Of a stretch of 64,000 nt of DNA, positions 7,534 to 46,856 are shown one piece after another. Within the stretch, counting starts at the first letter, position 1; every line of letters starts with the position of its first letter. The stretch covers positions 124,001 through 188,000 of the IMG/VR virus record IMGVR_UViG_3300035698_035366; one strand, given 5' to 3'. The notes beneath the pieces are model-generated. The model worked only from the letters and a program-made list of their open reading frames with translations. It had not been told where the DNA came from and did not search any database. The position numbers and the translations under genes were made by a program.

Positions 7534-9849
7534 ATGGCTGATAAGTTTGGTCTCTTGGCAGAAAGAATATTTAGTATTTTCAAAGGAACGGGGCACACCC
7601 TTAGACTCTTCGATGAGCAGGGAAACCAAACAATTGATCCTGAAAATGCTCGGCATTTCTTTGCTGTTGAAGACCGTATTATGGTTACTTTGCATCAAGA
7701 CAATGCGGATAACAATGAATTAACGTTAATGATTCCGGAAAAGAATGATAAGGGTGATGTCCGCCATTTTGCCGATATGATTAGATCTTTAAGACGGTCA
7801 GCACAACACTTTAATATTATGTTTACAGTTAGAAAATTTGGGCATGAGATTACACCGAAAGATGTGATCCATAAAATAAAAGAATCATGGAGTAATGACA
7901 TGGAAATCGCAGAACAGATGAATCCAAAGATGACGGGAACCTCTCGCACAAGTCATCAAAAGTGGAATGAAGCAAGACTAATCGTCAAGCACTCAAAAGT
8001 TGTAAATGAAGAACAACGGGGCGCTCGATCCAGAAATATTAGTCGGCTTTTTGTAGAAACCGCTGAAGGCGAACGTTTCTTGTTCCCTACAAAGAACTTA
8101 CAAGCTGCGAGAGCATGGTGTCGTCATCTGGGTGCGGGGGGTGTTGCTAATGACATAGTTAGTGAGCATATCAAAAGCCTAAGCAATGAAATGGAAACAT
8201 TGAAGGAATTTTCCGCACATATTTTCCGCAATAGGACAACTTTGGAAGAATCAGCACTTGCTGTTCGTTCATCTGCCCGCACTAGAATTGACGAGATCCG
8301 TAATGAGCTAGGTCGTTTTATGACTAAGAGAGCATACTTTACGGTTGCTGAAGAAATCGAAAGTTCTGAAACCAGCGGTGATACACTTGTCGAATCACAC
8401 ACCGATTTATCTGAGCGTTTAGAATGGTTGTCAGACACGTTAGCTATTGCAGAAGATCATGATTTATATGGTAAATTGTCTTCTTTAGTTGAATTTACCG
8501 AACCAGCTGTTGCTGACGAAGAACCAATGGAAGGACAATTTACTCCGGACGATGTTGCCCAAGCATATGAATTCCGTGGTGCAGATAATGCAGCCCGTGA
8601 CCCGGAAGGCACATTTGATTGGGAAGCAATCAATAAAGATACTCCTCCGGAGCACAAAGATCACCTGAAACCACCTGCCGTAGAACGTTTATATTTTGAA
8701 GAAGCTGCGGCCCTACTTAATACAAATGATTTTACGTTTTTTGACAAATACACCGATGACGACGCAAACAAACCAGATGAATGGACCCCTCGTGGAAAAT
8801 TAGCTTGGCGTTTAGCTTCAATCGCAAAGAGACTTGATCCAAAGGTTAAGGGACAATTGGTTCTTTCAAATATTCTTTCCTATGTGGCAGATAAGATGCA
8901 AGAAGGCGCAAGACCAAATCCACAAGCACAACGCATCGCTGGTCACTTCATTACAAATATTGCTCCAACAATTCATGAATCAATCAGCGTTCGTTTAGCA
9001 CAAATTGAAGAAAGTGTAAAACTTGGAGAATCATGGCTTGAAGATTTGGAATCAGCGGTTAATGATTTAGAAGCAGAGCTCGAAGCATTCATTGACAATG
9101 ACAGTGAATATGGCGCAGTTGACCCATTAATATACGATATGGCACAAGCCTATGGTGTAGATGTAGCAAGCTTGGCCAATGCATTCCACGACATGAAAGG
9201 TATACCACCAGAAGACTTCGTGTTTCGCGGTCGATCATTTGGTGAAAGCCGTGAACTAGACGAATGGTTCGAAGGATTTGATCCATTGAGAATTATTAAG
9301 GAATCTTCAAAAAAACTAACCGATGATATTCCAGTAATTCCGGGTGACATGGGAAAGGATTTTGAGGATGAAATTACAACCGATGGTTATGACCATGGTG
9401 AAGACGCGCAAAACATTATAAACTCAAACGACGAAATCGATACAGAGATGTATGAAGAAGTTGAATTGGCTAACGGTATGAAAGTTAAGTTTACTCCGGA
9501 TTATGCTGGTAATGACGCCGGTGAGGTTTTCACTTTAACGGGATGGGATGGCAAGCGTGGTCGAGTTGAAGATTCTCAAGGTCGTGGTTGGGGGGTTAGT
9601 GGTTATCAAATCGAGCCAGCTTTTTCAAGTCAAGACGACGATTACGATGATGATTCAATCCCAACGCAGGGATCATCCCGTGATCTGAGAGATATTAATG
9701 AAATTGCAGAATGGGCAGCTGATGCAGTTACCGATGGTAGAATGAATTTTGATGAAGCCGTTGAAGATTATTACCAAGACAATTTCGAAGAGAGTGGAAT
9801 TATGATTGGTAAATTCGAACAGATGGTTCAGGCACATTTGGATAGCTAA
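7534..9849 (+). CDS. Large hypothetical virion/head-associated protein with acidic modular C-terminal half
   Basis: 771-aa ORF after CATAAATA (7496). Many x-x-E sites (IKES, LVES, IHES, LGES, FGES). Shares a module with 3418..5472. Confidence 0.6.
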   Translation: MADKFGLLAERIFSIFKGTGHTLRLFDEQGNQTIDPENARHFFAVEDRIMVTLHQDNADNNELTLMIPEKNDKGDVRHFADMIRSLRRSAQHFNIMFTVRKFGHEITPKDVIHKIKESWSNDMEIAEQMNPKMTGTSRTSHQKWNEARLIVKHSKVVNEEQRGARSRNISRLFVETAEGERFLFPTKNLQAARAWCRHLGAGGVANDIVSEHIKSLSNEMETLKEFSAHIFRNRTTLEESALAVRSSARTRIDEIRNELGRFMTKRAYFTVAEEIESSETSGDTLVESHTDLSERLEWLSDTLAIAEDHDLYGKLSSLVEFTEPAVADEEPMEGQFTPDDVAQAYEFRGADNAARDPEGTFDWEAINKDTPPEHKDHLKPPAVERLYFEEAAALLNTNDFTFFDKYTDDDANKPDEWTPRGKLAWRLASIAKRLDPKVKGQLVLSNILSYVADKMQEGARPNPQAQRIAGHFITNIAPTIHESISVRLAQIEESVKLGESWLEDLESAVNDLEAELEAFIDNDSEYGAVDPLIYDMAQAYGVDVASLANAFHDMKGIPPEDFVFRGRSFGESRELDEWFEGFDPLRIIKESSKKLTDDIPVIPGDMGKDFEDEITTDGYDHGEDAQNIINSNDEIDTEMYEEVELANGMKVKFTPDYAGNDAGEVFTLTGWDGKRGRVEDSQGRGWGVSGYQIEPAFSSQDDDYDDDSIPTQGSSRDLRDINEIAEWAADAVTDGRMNFDEAVEDYYQDNFEESGIMIGKFEQMVQAHLDS

Positions 9850-9852
9850 GTC

Positions 9853-10437
9853 ATGCGCTTAGTTGAATTCGAAGATCCTGGAGTTTATGTTGCGTTTAAA
9901 CTTGATTTATCAAGTGCTACGCAATTATCAGATTTTGTTGAAAACGAGTTGGACATGAAGCCAATTCCTAAAGATTTAATGCATGTCACAGTGGCGTCAT
10001 TCAAAACTGGAACCATTAATGAGTCGACCTTTCCAAAAATAAATTTCCCAATTGAAATTGATATTGCGGATTCATTTAGTACCTTTGGTTTCTTTACACT
10101 TCCATTTAAAGGGATTTATAATGCTGCATATATCAATCTAGAAAATAACCGAGAACTAATGATTGCTAGGGGTAACATTTTAGATTGGATGGACGATTGC
10201 GGAATATCAACAAAAACACCAGGTGGTAGATTTAGAGCCAGATGGCGGGGATGGACCCCGCATGTTTCTGTTACTTTTCAGGATACAGAAAAAAATAAGC
10301 TTCCTTGGGAAGGGGGTAATATGATTAAAGTCAAAAACTTTTTAAGAGGGACTGTGGATCTACCAATTTCAACTATAAAAGTGTCAGATATAATTCTAAC
10401 GCCGCATGATAAGAATTGGGGAGCAGATTTAGTTTAA
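9853..10437 (+). CDS. 2H phosphoesterase, Acb1 (T4 gp57B)-like
   Basis: Two HxT/S motifs (MHVTV, PHVSV). GVYVAFK near the N-terminus and a W-x-x-D-L C-terminus parallel T4 57B as I recall it. Confidence 0.75.
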   Translation: MRLVEFEDPGVYVAFKLDLSSATQLSDFVENELDMKPIPKDLMHVTVASFKTGTINESTFPKINFPIEIDIADSFSTFGFFTLPFKGIYNAAYINLENNRELMIARGNILDWMDDCGISTKTPGGRFRARWRGWTPHVSVTFQDTEKNKLPWEGGNMIKVKNFLRGTVDLPISTIKVSDIILTPHDKNWGADLV

Positions 10438-10462
10438 CTATTTGAAATATATTGTTTAACTT

Positions 10463-10489
10463 GGGCGGGAGAAATCCCGTCCTTTTTTT
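10463..10489 (+). terminator. Intrinsic terminator
   Basis: GGGCGGGA-GAAA-TCCCGTCC followed by a T7 run. Confidence 0.85.
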
Positions 10490-10697
10490 GTGATTTTTTC
10501 ATTGATTTTTCGCCTATTTTTATATTGTTATTAACTTCAAGTATAAATATAATTAACATACAGTAAAGGGAAGCTTTATTGTGTGTTTAGGCAAAAGCAA
10601 AAAGTATTGGTGAAGTATTCATATTTTAATATTGATATCTTCACTGTACAGGCATTATATTATAGGCACTAACATAGGCAAAAAGGAAAACATAACT

Positions 10698-11759
10698 ATG
10701 GCAACATTAGCAGAAATCAGAGCAAAGCTCGCAGAACAAGAAGACCGTAAGTCATCTTACGGAAACAAAAAATCCAACAACGAAGTATATCCATTCTGGA
10801 ACATCGCAGACGGCTCAACGGCATTAGTCCGTTTCCTACCCGATGGCGATGACAATAATATCATGTTCTGGAAGGACCGTCAGATTATTAAGATCCCATT
10901 CGATTATGAAGGTAAGGAAGTTGAAGTCCAAGTTCCTTGCATGGATATGTATGGTAAGAAGTGTTTCATCACAGAAGAAATTAAGCCTTGGTGGAATGAT
11001 GACGACCTAATGCCACTAGCTCGTAAGTATTACAAGAAGCGCTCATATATCTTCCAGGGATTTGTGGTAAATAATCCACTTGAAGGCGATGAATGTGAAA
11101 CACCAATCCGTCGATTCGTAATCAATAAGAGCATTTTTGATATCATTAAGGCCAGTCTGCTAGATGCGGATATGGAAGATAGCCCAGTAGATTTTGATGC
11201 TGGTCGTGATTTCAAGATTACTAAGACAAAGAAAGGTAAGTATGCAGATTATACTACATCTGCATGGTCTATGAAGAGCCGCTCACTAAGCGACGAAGAA
11301 CGCGCAGCAATTGTTGAGCCAGGTCTTCATAATTTAAATGATTTTCTTCCAAACGAACCAAACGAAGAACAGCTAGTAGCAATCAAAGAAATGTTTGAAG
11401 CTAGTGTTAACGGTGACCCATACGATCTAAATCGTTGGGGCAACTTTTACCGTCCATATGGTATCCAGGCTCCAGAAGAATCCTCATCAGCCCCTGTTTC
11501 AAAGCCTACTACGCCCAAGCCAGTAGAAAAGGTAGCTGAAAAAGCAACTGAAACAGTCGTTGAAGACTCCGATGACAGCGTCCCTTTTGATGTCGACGAG
11601 TCAAACTCTCCAAAAGAAGACTCTTCAGCAGTTTCGTCCTTGAAAGACCGTGTTGCTGACGATGCACCTGCCCCTACAGGTAGTGATGATAGCTCGGAAG
11701 ATAAGCCCGATCCAAAAGCTATTATTGCGATGCTTCGTAACCGCAAAAAAGCTGAGTAA
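10698..11759 (+). CDS. Single-stranded DNA binding protein (T4 gp32-like)
   Basis: MATLAEIRAKL, ALVRFLPDGD, KRSYIFQGFV, GRDFKITK…YADY, acidic tail. ATG 10698 follows AGGA. Confidence 0.9.
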   Translation: MATLAEIRAKLAEQEDRKSSYGNKKSNNEVYPFWNIADGSTALVRFLPDGDDNNIMFWKDRQIIKIPFDYEGKEVEVQVPCMDMYGKKCFITEEIKPWWNDDDLMPLARKYYKKRSYIFQGFVVNNPLEGDECETPIRRFVINKSIFDIIKASLLDADMEDSPVDFDAGRDFKITKTKKGKYADYTTSAWSMKSRSLSDEERAAIVEPGLHNLNDFLPNEPNEEQLVAIKEMFEASVNGDPYDLNRWGNFYRPYGIQAPEESSSAPVSKPTTPKPVEKVAEKATETVVEDSDDSVPFDVDESNSPKEDSSAVSSLKDRVADDAPAPTGSDDSSEDKPDPKAIIAMLRNRKKAE

Positions 11760-46409: not shown

Positions 46410-46856
46410 ATGAGAGCACGAGAATTTTTGTTTGAATTATTTTTTAATGGGTTTGAGAACAGAAATAGGAAATATGTTGAACTGTTTATTAATCCAACTA
46501 GTAAAGAATTGCAGCAATTAGAAAGTCATGATACAATAAGAGCATTTTTAACAGAAGATGATTGTATAGCATGGGATTCAAATTTGGCATTGCACTATGA
46601 AGTTTCGGAAAATATAAATTTAGATAAAAACACAGTATCAATTTTACTGTATTATACCCCATCTGAACCAAACATATTAATATTAGTCACTGATTTTACG
46701 AAAAAAAGCCAATGGTTCCATAATCCTAATTTAGCAGATTGGATTAAAGATCATCCTTATATACAATCACTCGCCGATGAAGGTTATATCGATATATCTT
46801 ATTTCGATGAAGATATATATGGTGATTGGGAAAACCTAGAAGATGAGAGCTCATAA
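46410..46856 (+). CDS. Hypothetical protein with MRAREFLFE leader
   Basis: 148-aa ORF. Confidence 0.6.
   Translation: MRAREFLFELFFNGFENRNRKYVELFINPTSKELQQLESHDTIRAFLTEDDCIAWDSNLALHYEVSENINLDKNTVSILLYYTPSEPNILILVTDFTKKSQWFHNPNLADWIKDHPYIQSLADEGYIDISYFDEDIYGDWENLEDESS

What the first reader, a model, noticed from the sequence alone, without database searches (positions are those of the whole stretch)
9853..10437. Acb1-like 2H phosphodiesterase, a candidate anti-CBASS enzyme
Seen: HVT and HVS catalytic motifs, GVYVAFK start, PIPKDLMH, and a WGADLV end. Known: T4 gp57B (Acb1) is a 2H phosphoesterase that degrades cyclic oligonucleotide immune signals and, as I recall it, has the same landmarks (GLYVAAK, PVPREKIHST, WADDLK). 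Inference: immune-evasion enzyme. It is coupled to a late virion gene and has an MRLVEFE leader, so it may be packaged and delivered at injection.
Basis: partly seen in the sequence, partly recalled or inferred. Interest (0 to 1): 0.7.

Follow-up and report, generated by a model that had tools for sequence, protein, structure and literature searches.

The report
Divergent Acb1-like 2H phosphodiesterase gene
A jumbo phage from a salt lake carries a real, conserved gene for a two-histidine (2H) phosphodiesterase that is a distant relative of phage T4 Acb1, the enzyme that destroys the bacterial CBASS alarm nucleotides, so it is most likely an immune-evasion enzyme of a known kind in an unusually divergent form.

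Summary
Window 9853-10437 (+) is a 194-aa ORF under purifying selection (dN/dS 0.19 against a 74%-identical relative). It has two invariant H-x-T/S motifs (H44-V-T46, H137-V-S139).

An AlphaFold2 model (pLDDT 88) has the 2H fold. Its best solved match is Acb1 (Z 12.7, 139 of 140 residues aligned), but LigT and other 2H enzymes are close behind (Z about 11.7).

Sequence profiles decide:
- the family profile hits Acb1 first in the PDB (E 4e-5);
- hhalign against the Acb1 family gives 96.8% probability across both catalytic motifs;
- hhalign against an enterobacterial LigT family gives 5.9%.

Aromatic residues stand at the Acb1 base-stacking positions Y12, F107 and lid W147. The adenine-reading E141 is replaced by Thr. 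There are about 45 extra residues, and the protein scores below Pfam's Acb1 cut-off. Only six relatives were found among 1.84 billion representatives.

The gene is an insertion between a virion-protein gene and gene 32 that related jumbo phages lack.

The packaging idea is unproven. The N-terminal MRLxE[LFI] peptide is shared by seven unrelated ORFs of this phage (0.09 expected). T4 Acb1's own N-terminus matches the T4 internal-protein capsid-targeting core.

Verdict: new, divergent member of a known kind. Activity is untested.

The parts
9853..10437 (+). 194-aa ORF (stop codon included): divergent Acb1-like 2H phosphodiesterase
   Evidence: ORF and translation. dN/dS 0.19 against L009. AF2 model pLDDT 88. 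Best PDB fold matches are Acb1 7t26/7t27. hhalign against the Acb1 family gives 96.8%.
9853..9879 (+). N-terminal peptide MRLVEFEDP (aa 1-9), placed before the first beta strand. It contains an L-x-E at residues 3-5.
   Evidence: Residues 1-7 have pLDDT below 50 and the first strand starts at residue 11. The motif MR[LA]xE[LFI] starts 7 of 362 ORFs, against 0.09 expected. Canonical Acb1 proteins have a counterpart peptide.
9886..9888 (+). Y12, at the position of the Acb1 base-stacking Y12
   Evidence: Aligned GVYVA/GLYVA. Aromatic in 7 of 7 family members. The role of Y12 in Acb1 is from PMC9117128.
9982..9990 (+). First catalytic motif, H44-V-T46
   Evidence: Sequence. H is invariant and T/S conserved. 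Aligned to Acb1 H44/T46.
10243..10254 (+). W131-R-G-W134, aromatic residues 6 and 3 positions before the second His. They stand at the positions of Acb1 F107 and Y110.
   Evidence: Alignments. Position 131 is aromatic in 6 of 7 members and position 134 in 7 of 7. F107 stacks on a base in Acb1 (PMC9117128).
10261..10269 (+). Second catalytic motif, H137-V-S139
   Evidence: Sequence. Invariant P136-H137. Aligned to Acb1 PHITLSY.
10399..10434 (+). C-terminal segment T183-P-H-D-K-N-W189-G-A-D-L-V. It is the counterpart of the Acb1 E141...W147 lid (EPLKLDWADDLK). W189 stands at W147; T183 replaces E141.
   Evidence: MAFFT alignment A3. Position 189 is aromatic in 6 of 7 members. The roles of the lid and of E141 are from PMC9117128 and bioRxiv 2025.08.21.671373.
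7534..9849 (+). Upstream 771-aa gene, an orthologue of a virion structural protein. It ends 3 nt before the 2H ORF and lies in the same reading frame.
   Evidence: phrog_13484 'virion structural protein', E 1.9e-29. Phosso gp412, E 2e-54. PA5oct gp278, E 4e-48, annotated ESI-MS/MS.
10463..10492 (+). Intrinsic-terminator-like hairpin (8 pairs, 6 G-C) plus a T run, which closes the transcription unit after the 2H ORF
   Evidence: A similar hairpin and T run stand at the same place in the relative L009.
10695..11759 (+). gp32-type ssDNA-binding protein gene: the next, separate gene block. TATAAATA lies at 10542-10549 upstream.
   Evidence: Pfam gp32 and phrog_1192, E 1.4e-65. The start is judged from PA5oct and Phosso N-termini. 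TATAAATA.

Best explanation
The ORF encodes a metal-independent 2H phosphodiesterase of the viral Acb1-like kind.

Proposed mechanism, inferred from Acb1:
1. A cyclic di- or trinucleotide immune signal sits in the U-shaped cleft between the two lobes.
2. Its bases are stacked by Y12, W131/W134 and the C-terminal W189 lid.
3. The H44-x-T46 / H137-x-S139 tetrad catalyses attack of a ribose 2'-OH on the adjacent 3'-5' phosphodiester. This opens the ring through a 2',3'-cyclic phosphate that is then hydrolysed.
4. That removes the second messenger of CBASS (and possibly of type III CRISPR or related systems) before the effector kills the cell.

Expression, inferred from gene layout: the gene is an accessory insertion at the 3' end of a packaging/virion gene block, which suggests it is made late. 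That is when CBASS is known to fire in T4 infection.

Shown here:
- a real gene under purifying selection;
- a 2H fold with an intact catalytic tetrad;
- specific remote homology to Acb1;
- aromatic residues at three of the four Acb1 base-stacking positions, including a C-terminal Trp at the lid position.

Inferred: the substrate class, the biological role and the timing.
For: Gene reality:
- ORF.
- 74%-identical orthologue in the same synteny, with dN/dS 0.19.

Family:
- Only six true relatives in 1.84e9 representatives. Both His are invariant and both T/S positions conserved.

Fold:
- AF2 model with the family alignment: pLDDT 88.2, pTM 0.83.
- Foldseek against the PDB: rank 1-2 is Acb1 7t26/7t27 (E 3.9e-6), rank 3 is phage BCSR5 PDE-9.
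- VIA-align: Acb1 7t27 at Z 12.7, rmsd 2.7, 139 of 140 residues aligned.
- BFVD: six of the eleven best viral matches are named Acb1; the other five carry no name.

Sequence:
- Pfam's best hit is Acb1 in 5 of 7 members.
- The family profile against the PDB hits Acb1 first, at E 4.2e-5, with both motifs collinear.
- hhalign against 17 Acb1 proteins: probability 96.8%, E 3e-10, 111 columns.
- hhalign against an enterobacterial LigT family: probability 5.9%.

Functional residues defined in PMC9117128:
- Aromatic or identical residues stand at Y12, H44, T46, F107 (W131), H113 (H137), T115 (S139) and W147 (W189).

Context:
- The relatives Phosso and PA5oct have TerL - virion protein - gp32 - UvsX with no gene at this spot, so the ORF is an accessory insertion.
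- Other family members sit in unrelated, poorly annotated contexts.

Timing precedent:
- T4 Acb1 activity starts at about 15 min.
- A type II CBASS is activated late by the T4 gp21 protease.
- This phage encodes a gp21-type protease, Peptidase_S77, E 1e-26.

Biochemical precedent:
- The two nearest solved structures, Acb1 and PDE-9, both belong to the structural group with the broadest activity on CBASS messengers (bioRxiv 2025.08.21.671373).
Against: - No biochemical or expression data exist. Only DNA metagenome runs hold the sequence.
- The Pfam Acb1 score is 17.4 bits, below the 27-bit cut-off, and covers only residues 10-48.
- The structure does not separate Acb1 (Z 12.7) from LigT or plant CPDase (Z 11.7).
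- The ESM Atlas structure search ranks bacterial LigT-like clusters first (TM 0.65, against 0.62 for Acb1 clusters).
- E141, the only base-specific contact of Acb1, is Thr here and varies across the family.
- The equivalent of W74 is uncertain. hhalign puts Y89 there, MAFFT does not, and only 4 of 7 members are aromatic at that position.
- About 45 extra residues, in four insertions, could reshape the pocket.
- In the published screen, two of seven tested viral 2H structural groups cleaved none of 18 messengers.
- The host, and whether it has CBASS, is unknown.
Confidence: 0.6

Rival explanations
1. It is an RNA-end-healing enzyme: a LigT/ThpR-like 2',3'-cyclic phosphodiesterase, or a 2'-5' ligase-like enzyme. 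It would work with the phage's RNA ligase to repair tRNAs or mRNAs cut by host anticodon nucleases or other ribotoxins.
For: - LigT chains score nearly as high as Acb1 in structure comparison (Z 11.5-11.7).
- Atlas structure neighbours are led by bacterial LigT-like clusters.
- 4 of 7 family members give weak hits to Pfam 2_5_RNA_ligase2, and one to LigT_PEase.
- The phage encodes an Rnl2-type RNA ligase at C1:190578-191066.
Against: - hhalign against a LigT family gives 5.9% probability over 43 columns, against 96.8% over 111 columns for Acb1. Caveat: the LigT alignment was less diverse.
- No LigT chain appears in the profile search of the PDB, even at E up to 10.
- The RNA ligase lies about 57 kb away, with no Pnk or ligase neighbour.
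- T4 itself has both RNA ligases and Acb1, so a ligase in the genome does not discriminate.
- The C-terminal Trp lid and Y12 are Acb1 landmarks.
Confidence: 0.15
2. It is a 2H phosphodiesterase with a substrate outside the Acb1 range. Examples are 2'-5'-linked oligoadenylate-like signals, a narrow single messenger, ADP-ribose-derived cyclic phosphates, or a housekeeping nucleotide. In that case it is immune-related but not anti-CBASS, or it is metabolic.
For: - Viral 2H PDEs show group-specific and sometimes very narrow substrate ranges, and some groups cleave none of 18 tested messengers (bioRxiv 2025.08.21.671373).
- The adenine-reading E141 is lost.
- Four insertions add about 45 residues.
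- The second-best PDB sequence hit is the rotavirus VP3 2'-5'A phosphodiesterase domain (E 0.13).
- The plant Appr>p CPDase scores Z 11.7.
Against: - Aromatic residues stand at three of the four Acb1 stacking positions, including the lid Trp.
- The two nearest solved structures are both broad-range CBASS-signal degraders.
- The VP3 hit is not significant.
Confidence: 0.17
3. It is compatible with the main explanation and is not an alternative to it. The enzyme would be targeted into the prohead by its N-terminal peptide, trimmed by the gp21-type protease at L3-V4-E5, and injected with the DNA. It would then already be present when the next cell is infected.
For: - MR[LA]xE[LFI] starts 7 of 362 ORFs (0.09 expected; 0 of 20000 column shuffles reach 7).
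- The seven proteins show no BLASTP similarity to one another, and their codons differ, so the constraint is on the peptide.
- One of the seven is a homologue, aligned from residue 1, of PA5oct gp279 (MKLFEVF...), which carries an ESI-MS/MS note as a structural protein.
- Another begins MRLYELFDEDD, close to the T4 injected protein Alt, MELITELFDED.
- The motif contains the I/LxE consensus of gp21-type proteases (PMC12991175), and the phage has such a protease.
- In T4, the pattern M-x-x-[FY]-[KQ]-[DE]-F occurs six times in the genome. Five are the start codons of ipI, ipII, ipIII, 57B (Acb1) and 61.1.
- T-even internal proteins are diverse anti-defence proteins that share only a capsid-targeting sequence (PMC3012670).
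- Acb1 or 2H domains fused to portal or large head proteins exist.
- The gene follows a virion-protein gene by 3 nt.
Against: - No virion proteomics exist for this phage.
- The other motif-bearing ORFs have no demonstrated virion role. One is an M3 oligopeptidase whose PA5oct homologue carries no ESI-MS/MS note.
- The motif is not widespread in PA5oct: two ORFs in the 150 kb examined.
- PA5oct ESI-MS/MS notes also mark non-structural proteins (gp32-like, UvsX), so that label is not proof of packaging.
- No paper in the searched library links Acb1 to capsid targeting.
- T4 cGAMP-cleaving activity is first seen at about 15 min, not at injection.
- Both motif patterns were defined after seeing the hits.
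Confidence: 0.2

Closest known systems
Acb1 (phage T4 gp57B; Erwinia phage FBB1 Acb1, PDB 7T26/7T27; Pfam PF23474)
   Same: - 2H fold.
- The HxT/S pair lies on equivalent strands, and H44 even has the same residue number.
- GxYVAxK first strand with the stacking Tyr.
- Aromatic residue 6 positions before the second His.
- C-terminal Trp lid (NWGADLV against DWADDLK).
- Short conserved N-terminal peptide with hydrophobic-x-acidic-Phe.
- Phage-encoded accessory gene next to virion and late genes.
- Best PDB match by both sequence profile and structure.
   Different: - 16% identity in the multiple alignment.
- Below Pfam's gathering score (17.4 against 27 bits).
- 194 aa against about 150 aa, owing to four insertions: roughly residues 74-87, 100-104, 118-130 and 151-170.
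- Ser instead of Thr in the second motif.
- E141 is replaced by Thr.
- The W74 equivalent is uncertain.
- The host phage belongs to the PA5oct / Atu_ph07 / Phosso jumbo group, not Straboviridae.
2H PDE-9 of Burkholderia phage BCSR5 (PDB 9Q2Y/9Q2G); 'structural group 3' viral 2H PDEs of Doherty et al. 2025
   Same: Second-best solved structure (Z 12.1, 147 residues aligned). It is a phage 2H PDE that degrades 3'3'-cGAMP.
   Different: PDE-9 uses an N-terminal lid of 15 residues. Our protein has the Acb1-type C-terminal Trp, plus a 9-residue N-terminal peptide of unknown role. There was no detectable sequence match in the PDB profile search.
LigT/ThpR RNA 2',3'-cyclic phosphodiesterase (E. coli, PDB 5LDI and others; Pfam PF02834/PF13563)
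   Same: Same 2H fold and catalytic tetrad, and similar length (176 aa). Z is 11.5-11.7.
   Different: Profile-profile probability is only 5.9%. There are no significant Pfam or PDB sequence hits. LigT is a cellular housekeeping or RNA-repair enzyme without the C-terminal Trp lid.
T4 internal proteins IPI/IPII/IPIII and Alt (capsid-targeting-sequence proteins)
   Same: Unrelated proteins share only a short N-terminal peptide, in a phage with a gp21-type prohead protease. The N-terminal peptides are similar: MRLYELFDEDD against Alt MELITELFDED; T4 57B MMEFKDF against IPI MKTFKEF.
   Different: Packaging and cleavage are shown for the T4 proteins (PMC3012670). Nothing is shown for this phage, and the motif here is MRLxE[LFI], not MKT[FY][KQ]EF.

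Membership tests
2H phosphoesterase superfamily | Two H-x-T/S motifs on facing beta strands of a pseudo-two-fold alpha+beta fold | tested here: met
   H44-V-T46 and H137-V-S139 are invariant or conserved in 7 of 7 members. In the AF2 model (pLDDT 88), strand 44-50 begins at H44 and strand 137-139 holds the second motif. 57 PDB chains score Z >= 8, and every entry listed at Z >= 8 is 2H-fold.
Acb1 (Pfam PF23474) | Score at or above Pfam's gathering threshold (27 bits) | tested here: not met
   17.4 bits, E 0.0037, residues 10-48 only. The best family member reaches E 6.5e-4. The genome search gives 14.3 bits.
Acb1 | Detectable homology to Acb1 proteins across both catalytic motifs | tested here: met
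   hhalign of the family against 17 Acb1 proteins: probability 96.8%, E 3.1e-10, 111 columns. The family profile ranks 7t26 first in the PDB at E 4.2e-5, with both motifs collinear.
Acb1 | Aromatic base-stacking residues Y12, W74, F107, W147 (PMC9117128) | tested here: inconclusive
   Aromatic residues stand at Y12 (Y12), F107 (W131) and W147 (W189), and are aromatic in 6-7 of 7 members. The W74 equivalent is Y89 by hhalign but not by MAFFT, and that position is aromatic in only 4 of 7. The mapping is by alignment, not by superposed coordinates.
Acb1 | E141 contact to adenine N6 (the requirement for one adenosine) | tested here: not met
   T183-P184 aligns with E141-P142. The family has T, M, T, S, D, D, E at this column.
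Acb1 | Short flexible C-terminal lid that closes over the ligand (residues 145-152) | tested here: inconclusive
   The sequence counterpart is present (KNWGADLV against LDWADDLK), and pLDDT falls to 70-81 at the C-terminus. Closure over a ligand cannot be tested here. The ligand job was not folded.
Acb1 | [quoted passage not shown] | not testable with these tools
   This needs enzyme assays and plaque assays.
LigT/ThpR (Pfam PF02834, PF13563) | Score at or above the Pfam thresholds, or profile homology to LigT | tested here: not met
   PF13563 scores 14.5 bits against a 27-bit cut-off. hhalign against an enterobacterial LigT alignment gives probability 5.9%. No PF13563 match was found in the genome search at E <= 1.
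T4-type capsid-targeted internal proteins | N-terminal targeting peptide shared among unrelated proteins, a gp21-type protease, and presence in the virion | tested here: inconclusive
   The shared peptide is enriched, 7 against 0.09 expected. The protease is present. Presence in the virion cannot be tested here.

The most novel reading that the evidence does not exclude
Acb1-type enzymes, including this one and perhaps T4 gp57B itself, carry a capsid-targeting-type N-terminal peptide. They would be loaded into the phage head and injected with the DNA. The phage would then arrive already armed against cyclic-oligonucleotide signalling. In this jumbo phage, the MRLxE[LFI] peptide would mark a whole set of at least seven injected proteins.
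Probability: 0.18. Interest if true: 0.75.

Novelty: new member of a known kind. Interest (0 to 1): 0.45.

Why it matters
The finding extends the Acb1-like immune-evasion phosphodiesterases to a lineage that standard annotation misses.
- Pfam and PHROGs give only sub-threshold hits.
- tblastn finds nothing in 50,697 phage genomes.
- Only six relatives exist in 1.84 billion representative proteins.
- The host phage belongs to the PA5oct / Atu_ph07-like jumbo phages and comes from a salt lake.

The loss of the adenine-reading Glu and the four insertions make the protein a useful natural variant. It could be used to ask how the 2H core sets messenger specificity, including whether it avoids decoy signals such as the Panoptes 2'3'-c-di-AMP.

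The side observation concerns the N-terminal peptide. In T4, Acb1's N-terminal peptide matches the core pattern shared by the internal-protein capsid-targeting sequences. In this phage, the peptide belongs to a strongly enriched N-terminal motif. This gives a cheap, testable hypothesis about pre-packaged counter-defence.

Tried and rejected
- **Single-sequence AF2 model:** useless, pLDDT 31. It was replaced by the model built on the alignment.
- **tblastn and megablast against 50,697 phage genomes:** no match.
- **phmmer of the single protein against the PDB:** no match.
- **P0005 (5073 aa):** listed by the representative search at E 6e-12. It is a false positive, a repetitive cadherin/beta-helix protein with no BLASTP similarity, and was left out of all alignments.
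- **The search for related loci with the family alignment:** With the single protein it found only a 100%-identical copy on a second IMG/VR contig.
- **Synteny of the distant homologue P0003:** rejected. Its 354-aa neighbour is not gp32.
- **PA5oct gp279 as orthologue of the upstream 771-aa gene:** rejected. The orthologue is gp278.
- **Test of the N-terminal motif against PA5oct virion MS annotation:** uninformative. Only two motif-bearing ORFs occur in the 150 kb examined.
- **TATAAATA late-promoter count in the window:** not enriched, 6 against 7.9 expected. No promoter claim is made.
- **Complex prediction with 3'3'-cGAMP:** not folded, no verdict. It is not evidence either way.
- **Sequencing runs:** only DNA metagenomes from a salt lake, so no transcript evidence.
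- **Paralogy as the explanation of the shared N-terminal motif:** rejected. There are no BLASTP hits among the motif proteins, and their codons differ.
Full report
**1. The observation**

The window holds one ORF at 9853-10437 (+), 194 aa.
- It begins MRLVEFEDPGVYVAFK.
- It contains PIPKDLMHVTV (H44-V-T46, nt 9982-9990) and TPHVSVTF (H137-V-S139, nt 10261-10269).
- It ends KNWGADLV.

I translated T4 gene 57B from the T4 record.

The ORF is a real gene.
- A 193-aa orthologue at 74% identity lies in the same gene order on a 23-kb metagenomic contig.
- Codon comparison gives dN 0.167, dS 0.87 and dN/dS 0.19.
- An identical copy is on a second IMG/VR contig.

**2. The genome**

- The window is bases 124001-188000 of a 296-kb IMG/VR virus record, estimated 79% complete. 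The same protein also lies on a 408-kb contig.
- GC content is 38%.
- The large terminase is closest to the jumbo phages Sinorhizobium Phosso (56%), Pseudomonas PA5oct (50%), Agrobacterium Atu_ph07 and Klebsiella RaK2.
- The phage has T4-type core genes: tail tube, gp4-like head completion, TerL, gp32, UvsX, UvsY. It also has a gp21-type prohead protease, Peptidase_S77, E 1e-26.
- The DNA is found only in salt-lake metagenome runs.

**3. The locus**

- The 2H ORF starts 3 nt after a 771-aa gene (7534-9849). That gene is orthologous to Phosso gp412 (E 2e-54) and to PA5oct gp278 (E 4e-48). PA5oct gp278 is annotated as a virion structural protein detected by ESI-MS/MS.
- No strong Shine-Dalgarno sequence precedes the ATG (read directly).
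- A terminator-like hairpin follows at 10463-10482. A similar hairpin stands at the same place in the relative.
- The next block is gp32 (true start 10695, judged from relatives), UvsX and UvsY.
- In Phosso and PA5oct the order is TerL - virion protein(s) - gp32 - UvsX, with nothing where the 2H ORF sits. The ORF is therefore an accessory insertion at an operon end.
- The more distant family members lie in unrelated, poorly annotated neighbourhoods.

**4. What the protein is**

*Direct family searches are weak.*
- Pfam Acb1: E 0.0037, 17.4 bits against a 27-bit cut-off, residues 10-48 only.
- Pfam 2_5_RNA_ligase2: E 0.037.
- PHROG 755 'RNA ligase': E 0.0033.

*The family is small.*
- An exhaustive HMMER search of 1.84 billion representative proteins found seven hits. 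One, P0005, is a repetitive false positive.
- In the seven-sequence alignment both histidines, P136 and G10 are invariant, and both T/S positions are conserved.

*Sequence profiles point to Acb1.*
- The profile of this alignment finds Acb1 (7t26) as the best PDB sequence, at E 4.2e-5, with both motifs aligned in order. The next hit, the rotavirus VP3 phosphodiesterase domain, is at E 0.13. No LigT chain appears.
- Profile-profile comparison with 17 Acb1 proteins gives 96.8% probability, E 3e-10, over 111 columns spanning both motifs.
- The same comparison with 14 enterobacterial LigT/ThpR proteins gives 5.9% over 43 columns. That alignment is less diverse, which lowers its reach.

*Structure confirms the fold but does not discriminate.*
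- With the family alignment, AlphaFold2 gives pLDDT 88.2 and pTM 0.83.
- Foldseek ranks Acb1 7t26/7t27 first (E 3.9e-6), then phage BCSR5 PDE-9, then LigT.
- VIA-align gives Acb1 7t27 Z 12.7 (rmsd 2.7, 139 of 140 residues), PDE-9 12.1, and LigT and plant CPDase 11.7.
- Among viral models, six of the eleven best matches are named Acb1; the other five carry no name.
- The ESM Atlas places it among viral 2H clusters with mixed labels. By structure, bacterial LigT-like clusters are as close as Acb1 clusters.

Overall, the fold is certain. The assignment to the Acb1 side rests on sequence profiles and on specific residues.

**5. Functional residues**

Hobbs et al. (PMC9117128) define these Acb1 features:
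- the H44/T46/H113/T115 tetrad;
- the stacking residues Y12, W74, F107 and W147;
- E141, which reads adenine N6;
- a C-terminal lid, residues 145-152.

Here the alignments give:

| Acb1 feature | This protein | Family conservation |
|---|---|---|
| Y12 | Y12 | aromatic 7 of 7 |
| H44, T46 | H44, T46 | H invariant; T/S 7 of 7 |
| F107 | W131 | aromatic 6 of 7 |
| Y110 | W134 | aromatic 7 of 7 |
| H113, T115 | H137, S139 | H invariant; T/S 7 of 7 |
| W147 | W189 | aromatic 6 of 7 |
| E141 | T183 | not conserved; variable |
| W74 | uncertain (Y89 by hhalign only) | aromatic 4 of 7 |

Relative to Acb1 there are four insertions, at about residues 74-87, 100-104, 118-130 and 151-170.

Doherty et al. 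(bioRxiv 2025.08.21.671373) report three relevant points.
- Viral 2H PDEs are very diverse.
- Substrate range follows the structure of the core.
- Acb1 and PDE-9, our two nearest solved neighbours, have the broadest range on CBASS messengers, while two other groups cleaved nothing in their panel.

**6. Mechanism proposed**

A metal-independent 2H phosphodiesterase opens cyclic oligonucleotide immune signals by 2'-OH attack, through a 2',3'-cyclic phosphate. Bases are held by Y12, W131/W134 and the W189 lid. The loss of the E141 equivalent suggests a different or looser base requirement.

The role and the substrate are inferred, with confidence about 0.6.

Late co-expression with virion genes is inferred from layout only. 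It fits published data: T4 Acb1 activity appears at about 15 min, and a type II CBASS is switched on late by the T4 gp21 protease cutting the CD-NTase at an I/LxE site (PMC12991175).

**7. The 'leader' and packaging**

Residues 1-9 precede the first strand and are modelled with low confidence.

*The peptide is ancestral to Acb1-like proteins.*
- Most of the roughly 65 canonical Acb1 proteins listed carry an 8-9-residue peptide of the type M-x-[FL]-x-[DE]-[FLV]-x-x before GLYVAAK.
- MRLVEFEDP is therefore an ancestral feature and a further collinear landmark with Acb1.
- The FBB1 crystal construct lacks this peptide (P0068).

*The motif is enriched in this phage.*
- Seven of 362 ORFs start MR[LA]xE[LFI], against 0.09 expected. 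No shuffle out of 20000 reached seven.
- These proteins are unrelated to one another and use different codons, so the constraint is on the peptide.
- One is homologous, from residue 1, to PA5oct gp279 (MKLFEVF...), which carries an ESI-MS/MS note as a structural protein.
- One begins MRLYELFDEDD, close to T4 Alt MELITELFDED.
- One is an M3 oligopeptidase.
- The motif contains the L-x-E consensus of gp21-type proteases.

*T4 shows a parallel.*
- The pattern M-x-x-[FY]-[KQ]-[DE]-F occurs six times in the whole T4 genome.
- Five of these are the start codons of ipI, ipII, ipIII, 57B (Acb1) and 61.1.
- 57B lies beside ipI.
- T-even internal proteins are described as diverse anti-defence proteins that share only a capsid-targeting sequence (PMC3012670).

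*Fusions exist.* Acb1 or 2H domains fused to portal or large head proteins are found.

*Caveats.*
- Both patterns were chosen after seeing the hits.
- No virion data exist for this phage.
- PA5oct shows no spread of the motif.
- I found no paper linking Acb1 to capsid targeting.

I rate packaging at about 0.2.

**8. Comparison and novelty**

The protein works like Acb1 and is its remote homologue. It fails Pfam's membership threshold and lacks E141, so I file it as a divergent Acb1-like viral 2H phosphodiesterase rather than as an Acb1 orthologue.

Given the published diversity of viral 2H PDEs, this is a new member of a known kind. Interest is moderate. The part with most upside is the N-terminal peptide.

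Noticed in passing
Own genome G000:C1 22314-23363(-), 23363-24616(-), 98783-99118(-), 114432-116462(+), 133853-134437(+) = window 9853-10437, 170410-170856(+) = window 46410-46856, 248988-249656(+): Seven unrelated ORFs begin MR[LA]xE[LFI], against 0.09 expected, and their codons differ. This looks like a peptide-level N-terminal signal containing the L-x-E consensus of gp21-type proteases. One ORF is a homologue of PA5oct gp279, which carries an ESI-MS/MS note as a structural protein. One resembles the N-terminus of T4 Alt. One is an M3 oligopeptidase.
   Followed up: partly
L002 / T4 NC_000866: start codons at 74410 (57B), 73878 (ipI), 65718 (ipII), 66415 (ipIII), 19130 (61.1): The pattern M-x-x-[FY]-[KQ]-[DE]-F occurs six times in the whole T4 genome. 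Five are these start codons, so T4 Acb1 (and gp61.1) share the core of the internal-protein capsid-targeting sequence. Most canonical Acb1 proteins listed have a similar 8-9-residue N-terminal peptide, which the FBB1 crystal construct lacks. No paper in the library links Acb1 to capsid targeting.
   Followed up: partly
window 9847-9855: The 771-aa virion-protein ORF and the 2H ORF are in the same reading frame, separated only by TAA GTC. The relative L009 has the same arrangement (TAA GTT). Read-through would fuse the 2H domain to a virion protein. With two close relatives this may well be chance.
   Followed up: no
ESM Atlas and BFVD hits: One cluster of 553-aa viral proteins combines Phage_portal_3 with an Acb1 domain. 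2H domains also occur inside proteins of about 880-1130 aa from Gordonia and Microbacterium phages and an uncultured phage; two of these are named structural or capsid-morphogenesis proteins. Virion-attached 2H phosphodiesterases therefore exist.
   Followed up: no
window 10438-10694: The intergenic region before gene 32 is about 257 nt, AT-rich and conserved in the relative L009. It holds a terminator (10463-10482) and a TATAAATA (10542-10549). It could hold a gp32 translational operator like that of T4. It was not examined.
   Followed up: no
G000:C1:261529-262638 and 114432-116462: A 369-aa ORF with a PEP-CTERM sorting motif and a full-length M3 oligopeptidase A-like gene (E 8e-125) lie in this virus record. 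PA5oct also has the oligopeptidase. The PEP-CTERM gene may hint at the host group, or at host DNA at the record's end; IMG/VR classes the record as a provirus.
   Followed up: no
G000:C1:23363-24616 (417 aa): This motif-bearing protein has a conserved GKNTKWCT region shared with PA5oct gp279. It also has about seven tandem repeats of 'HREDGPA-E---G-K-W-LNG', which look MORN-like.
   Followed up: no
L011 12243-12582; L013 7544-8308: Contigs that carry distant family members also encode an ART-PolyVal ADP-ribosyltransferase domain protein (L011) and a TIR_2 domain protein (L013), within 6 kb of the 2H gene.
   Followed up: no
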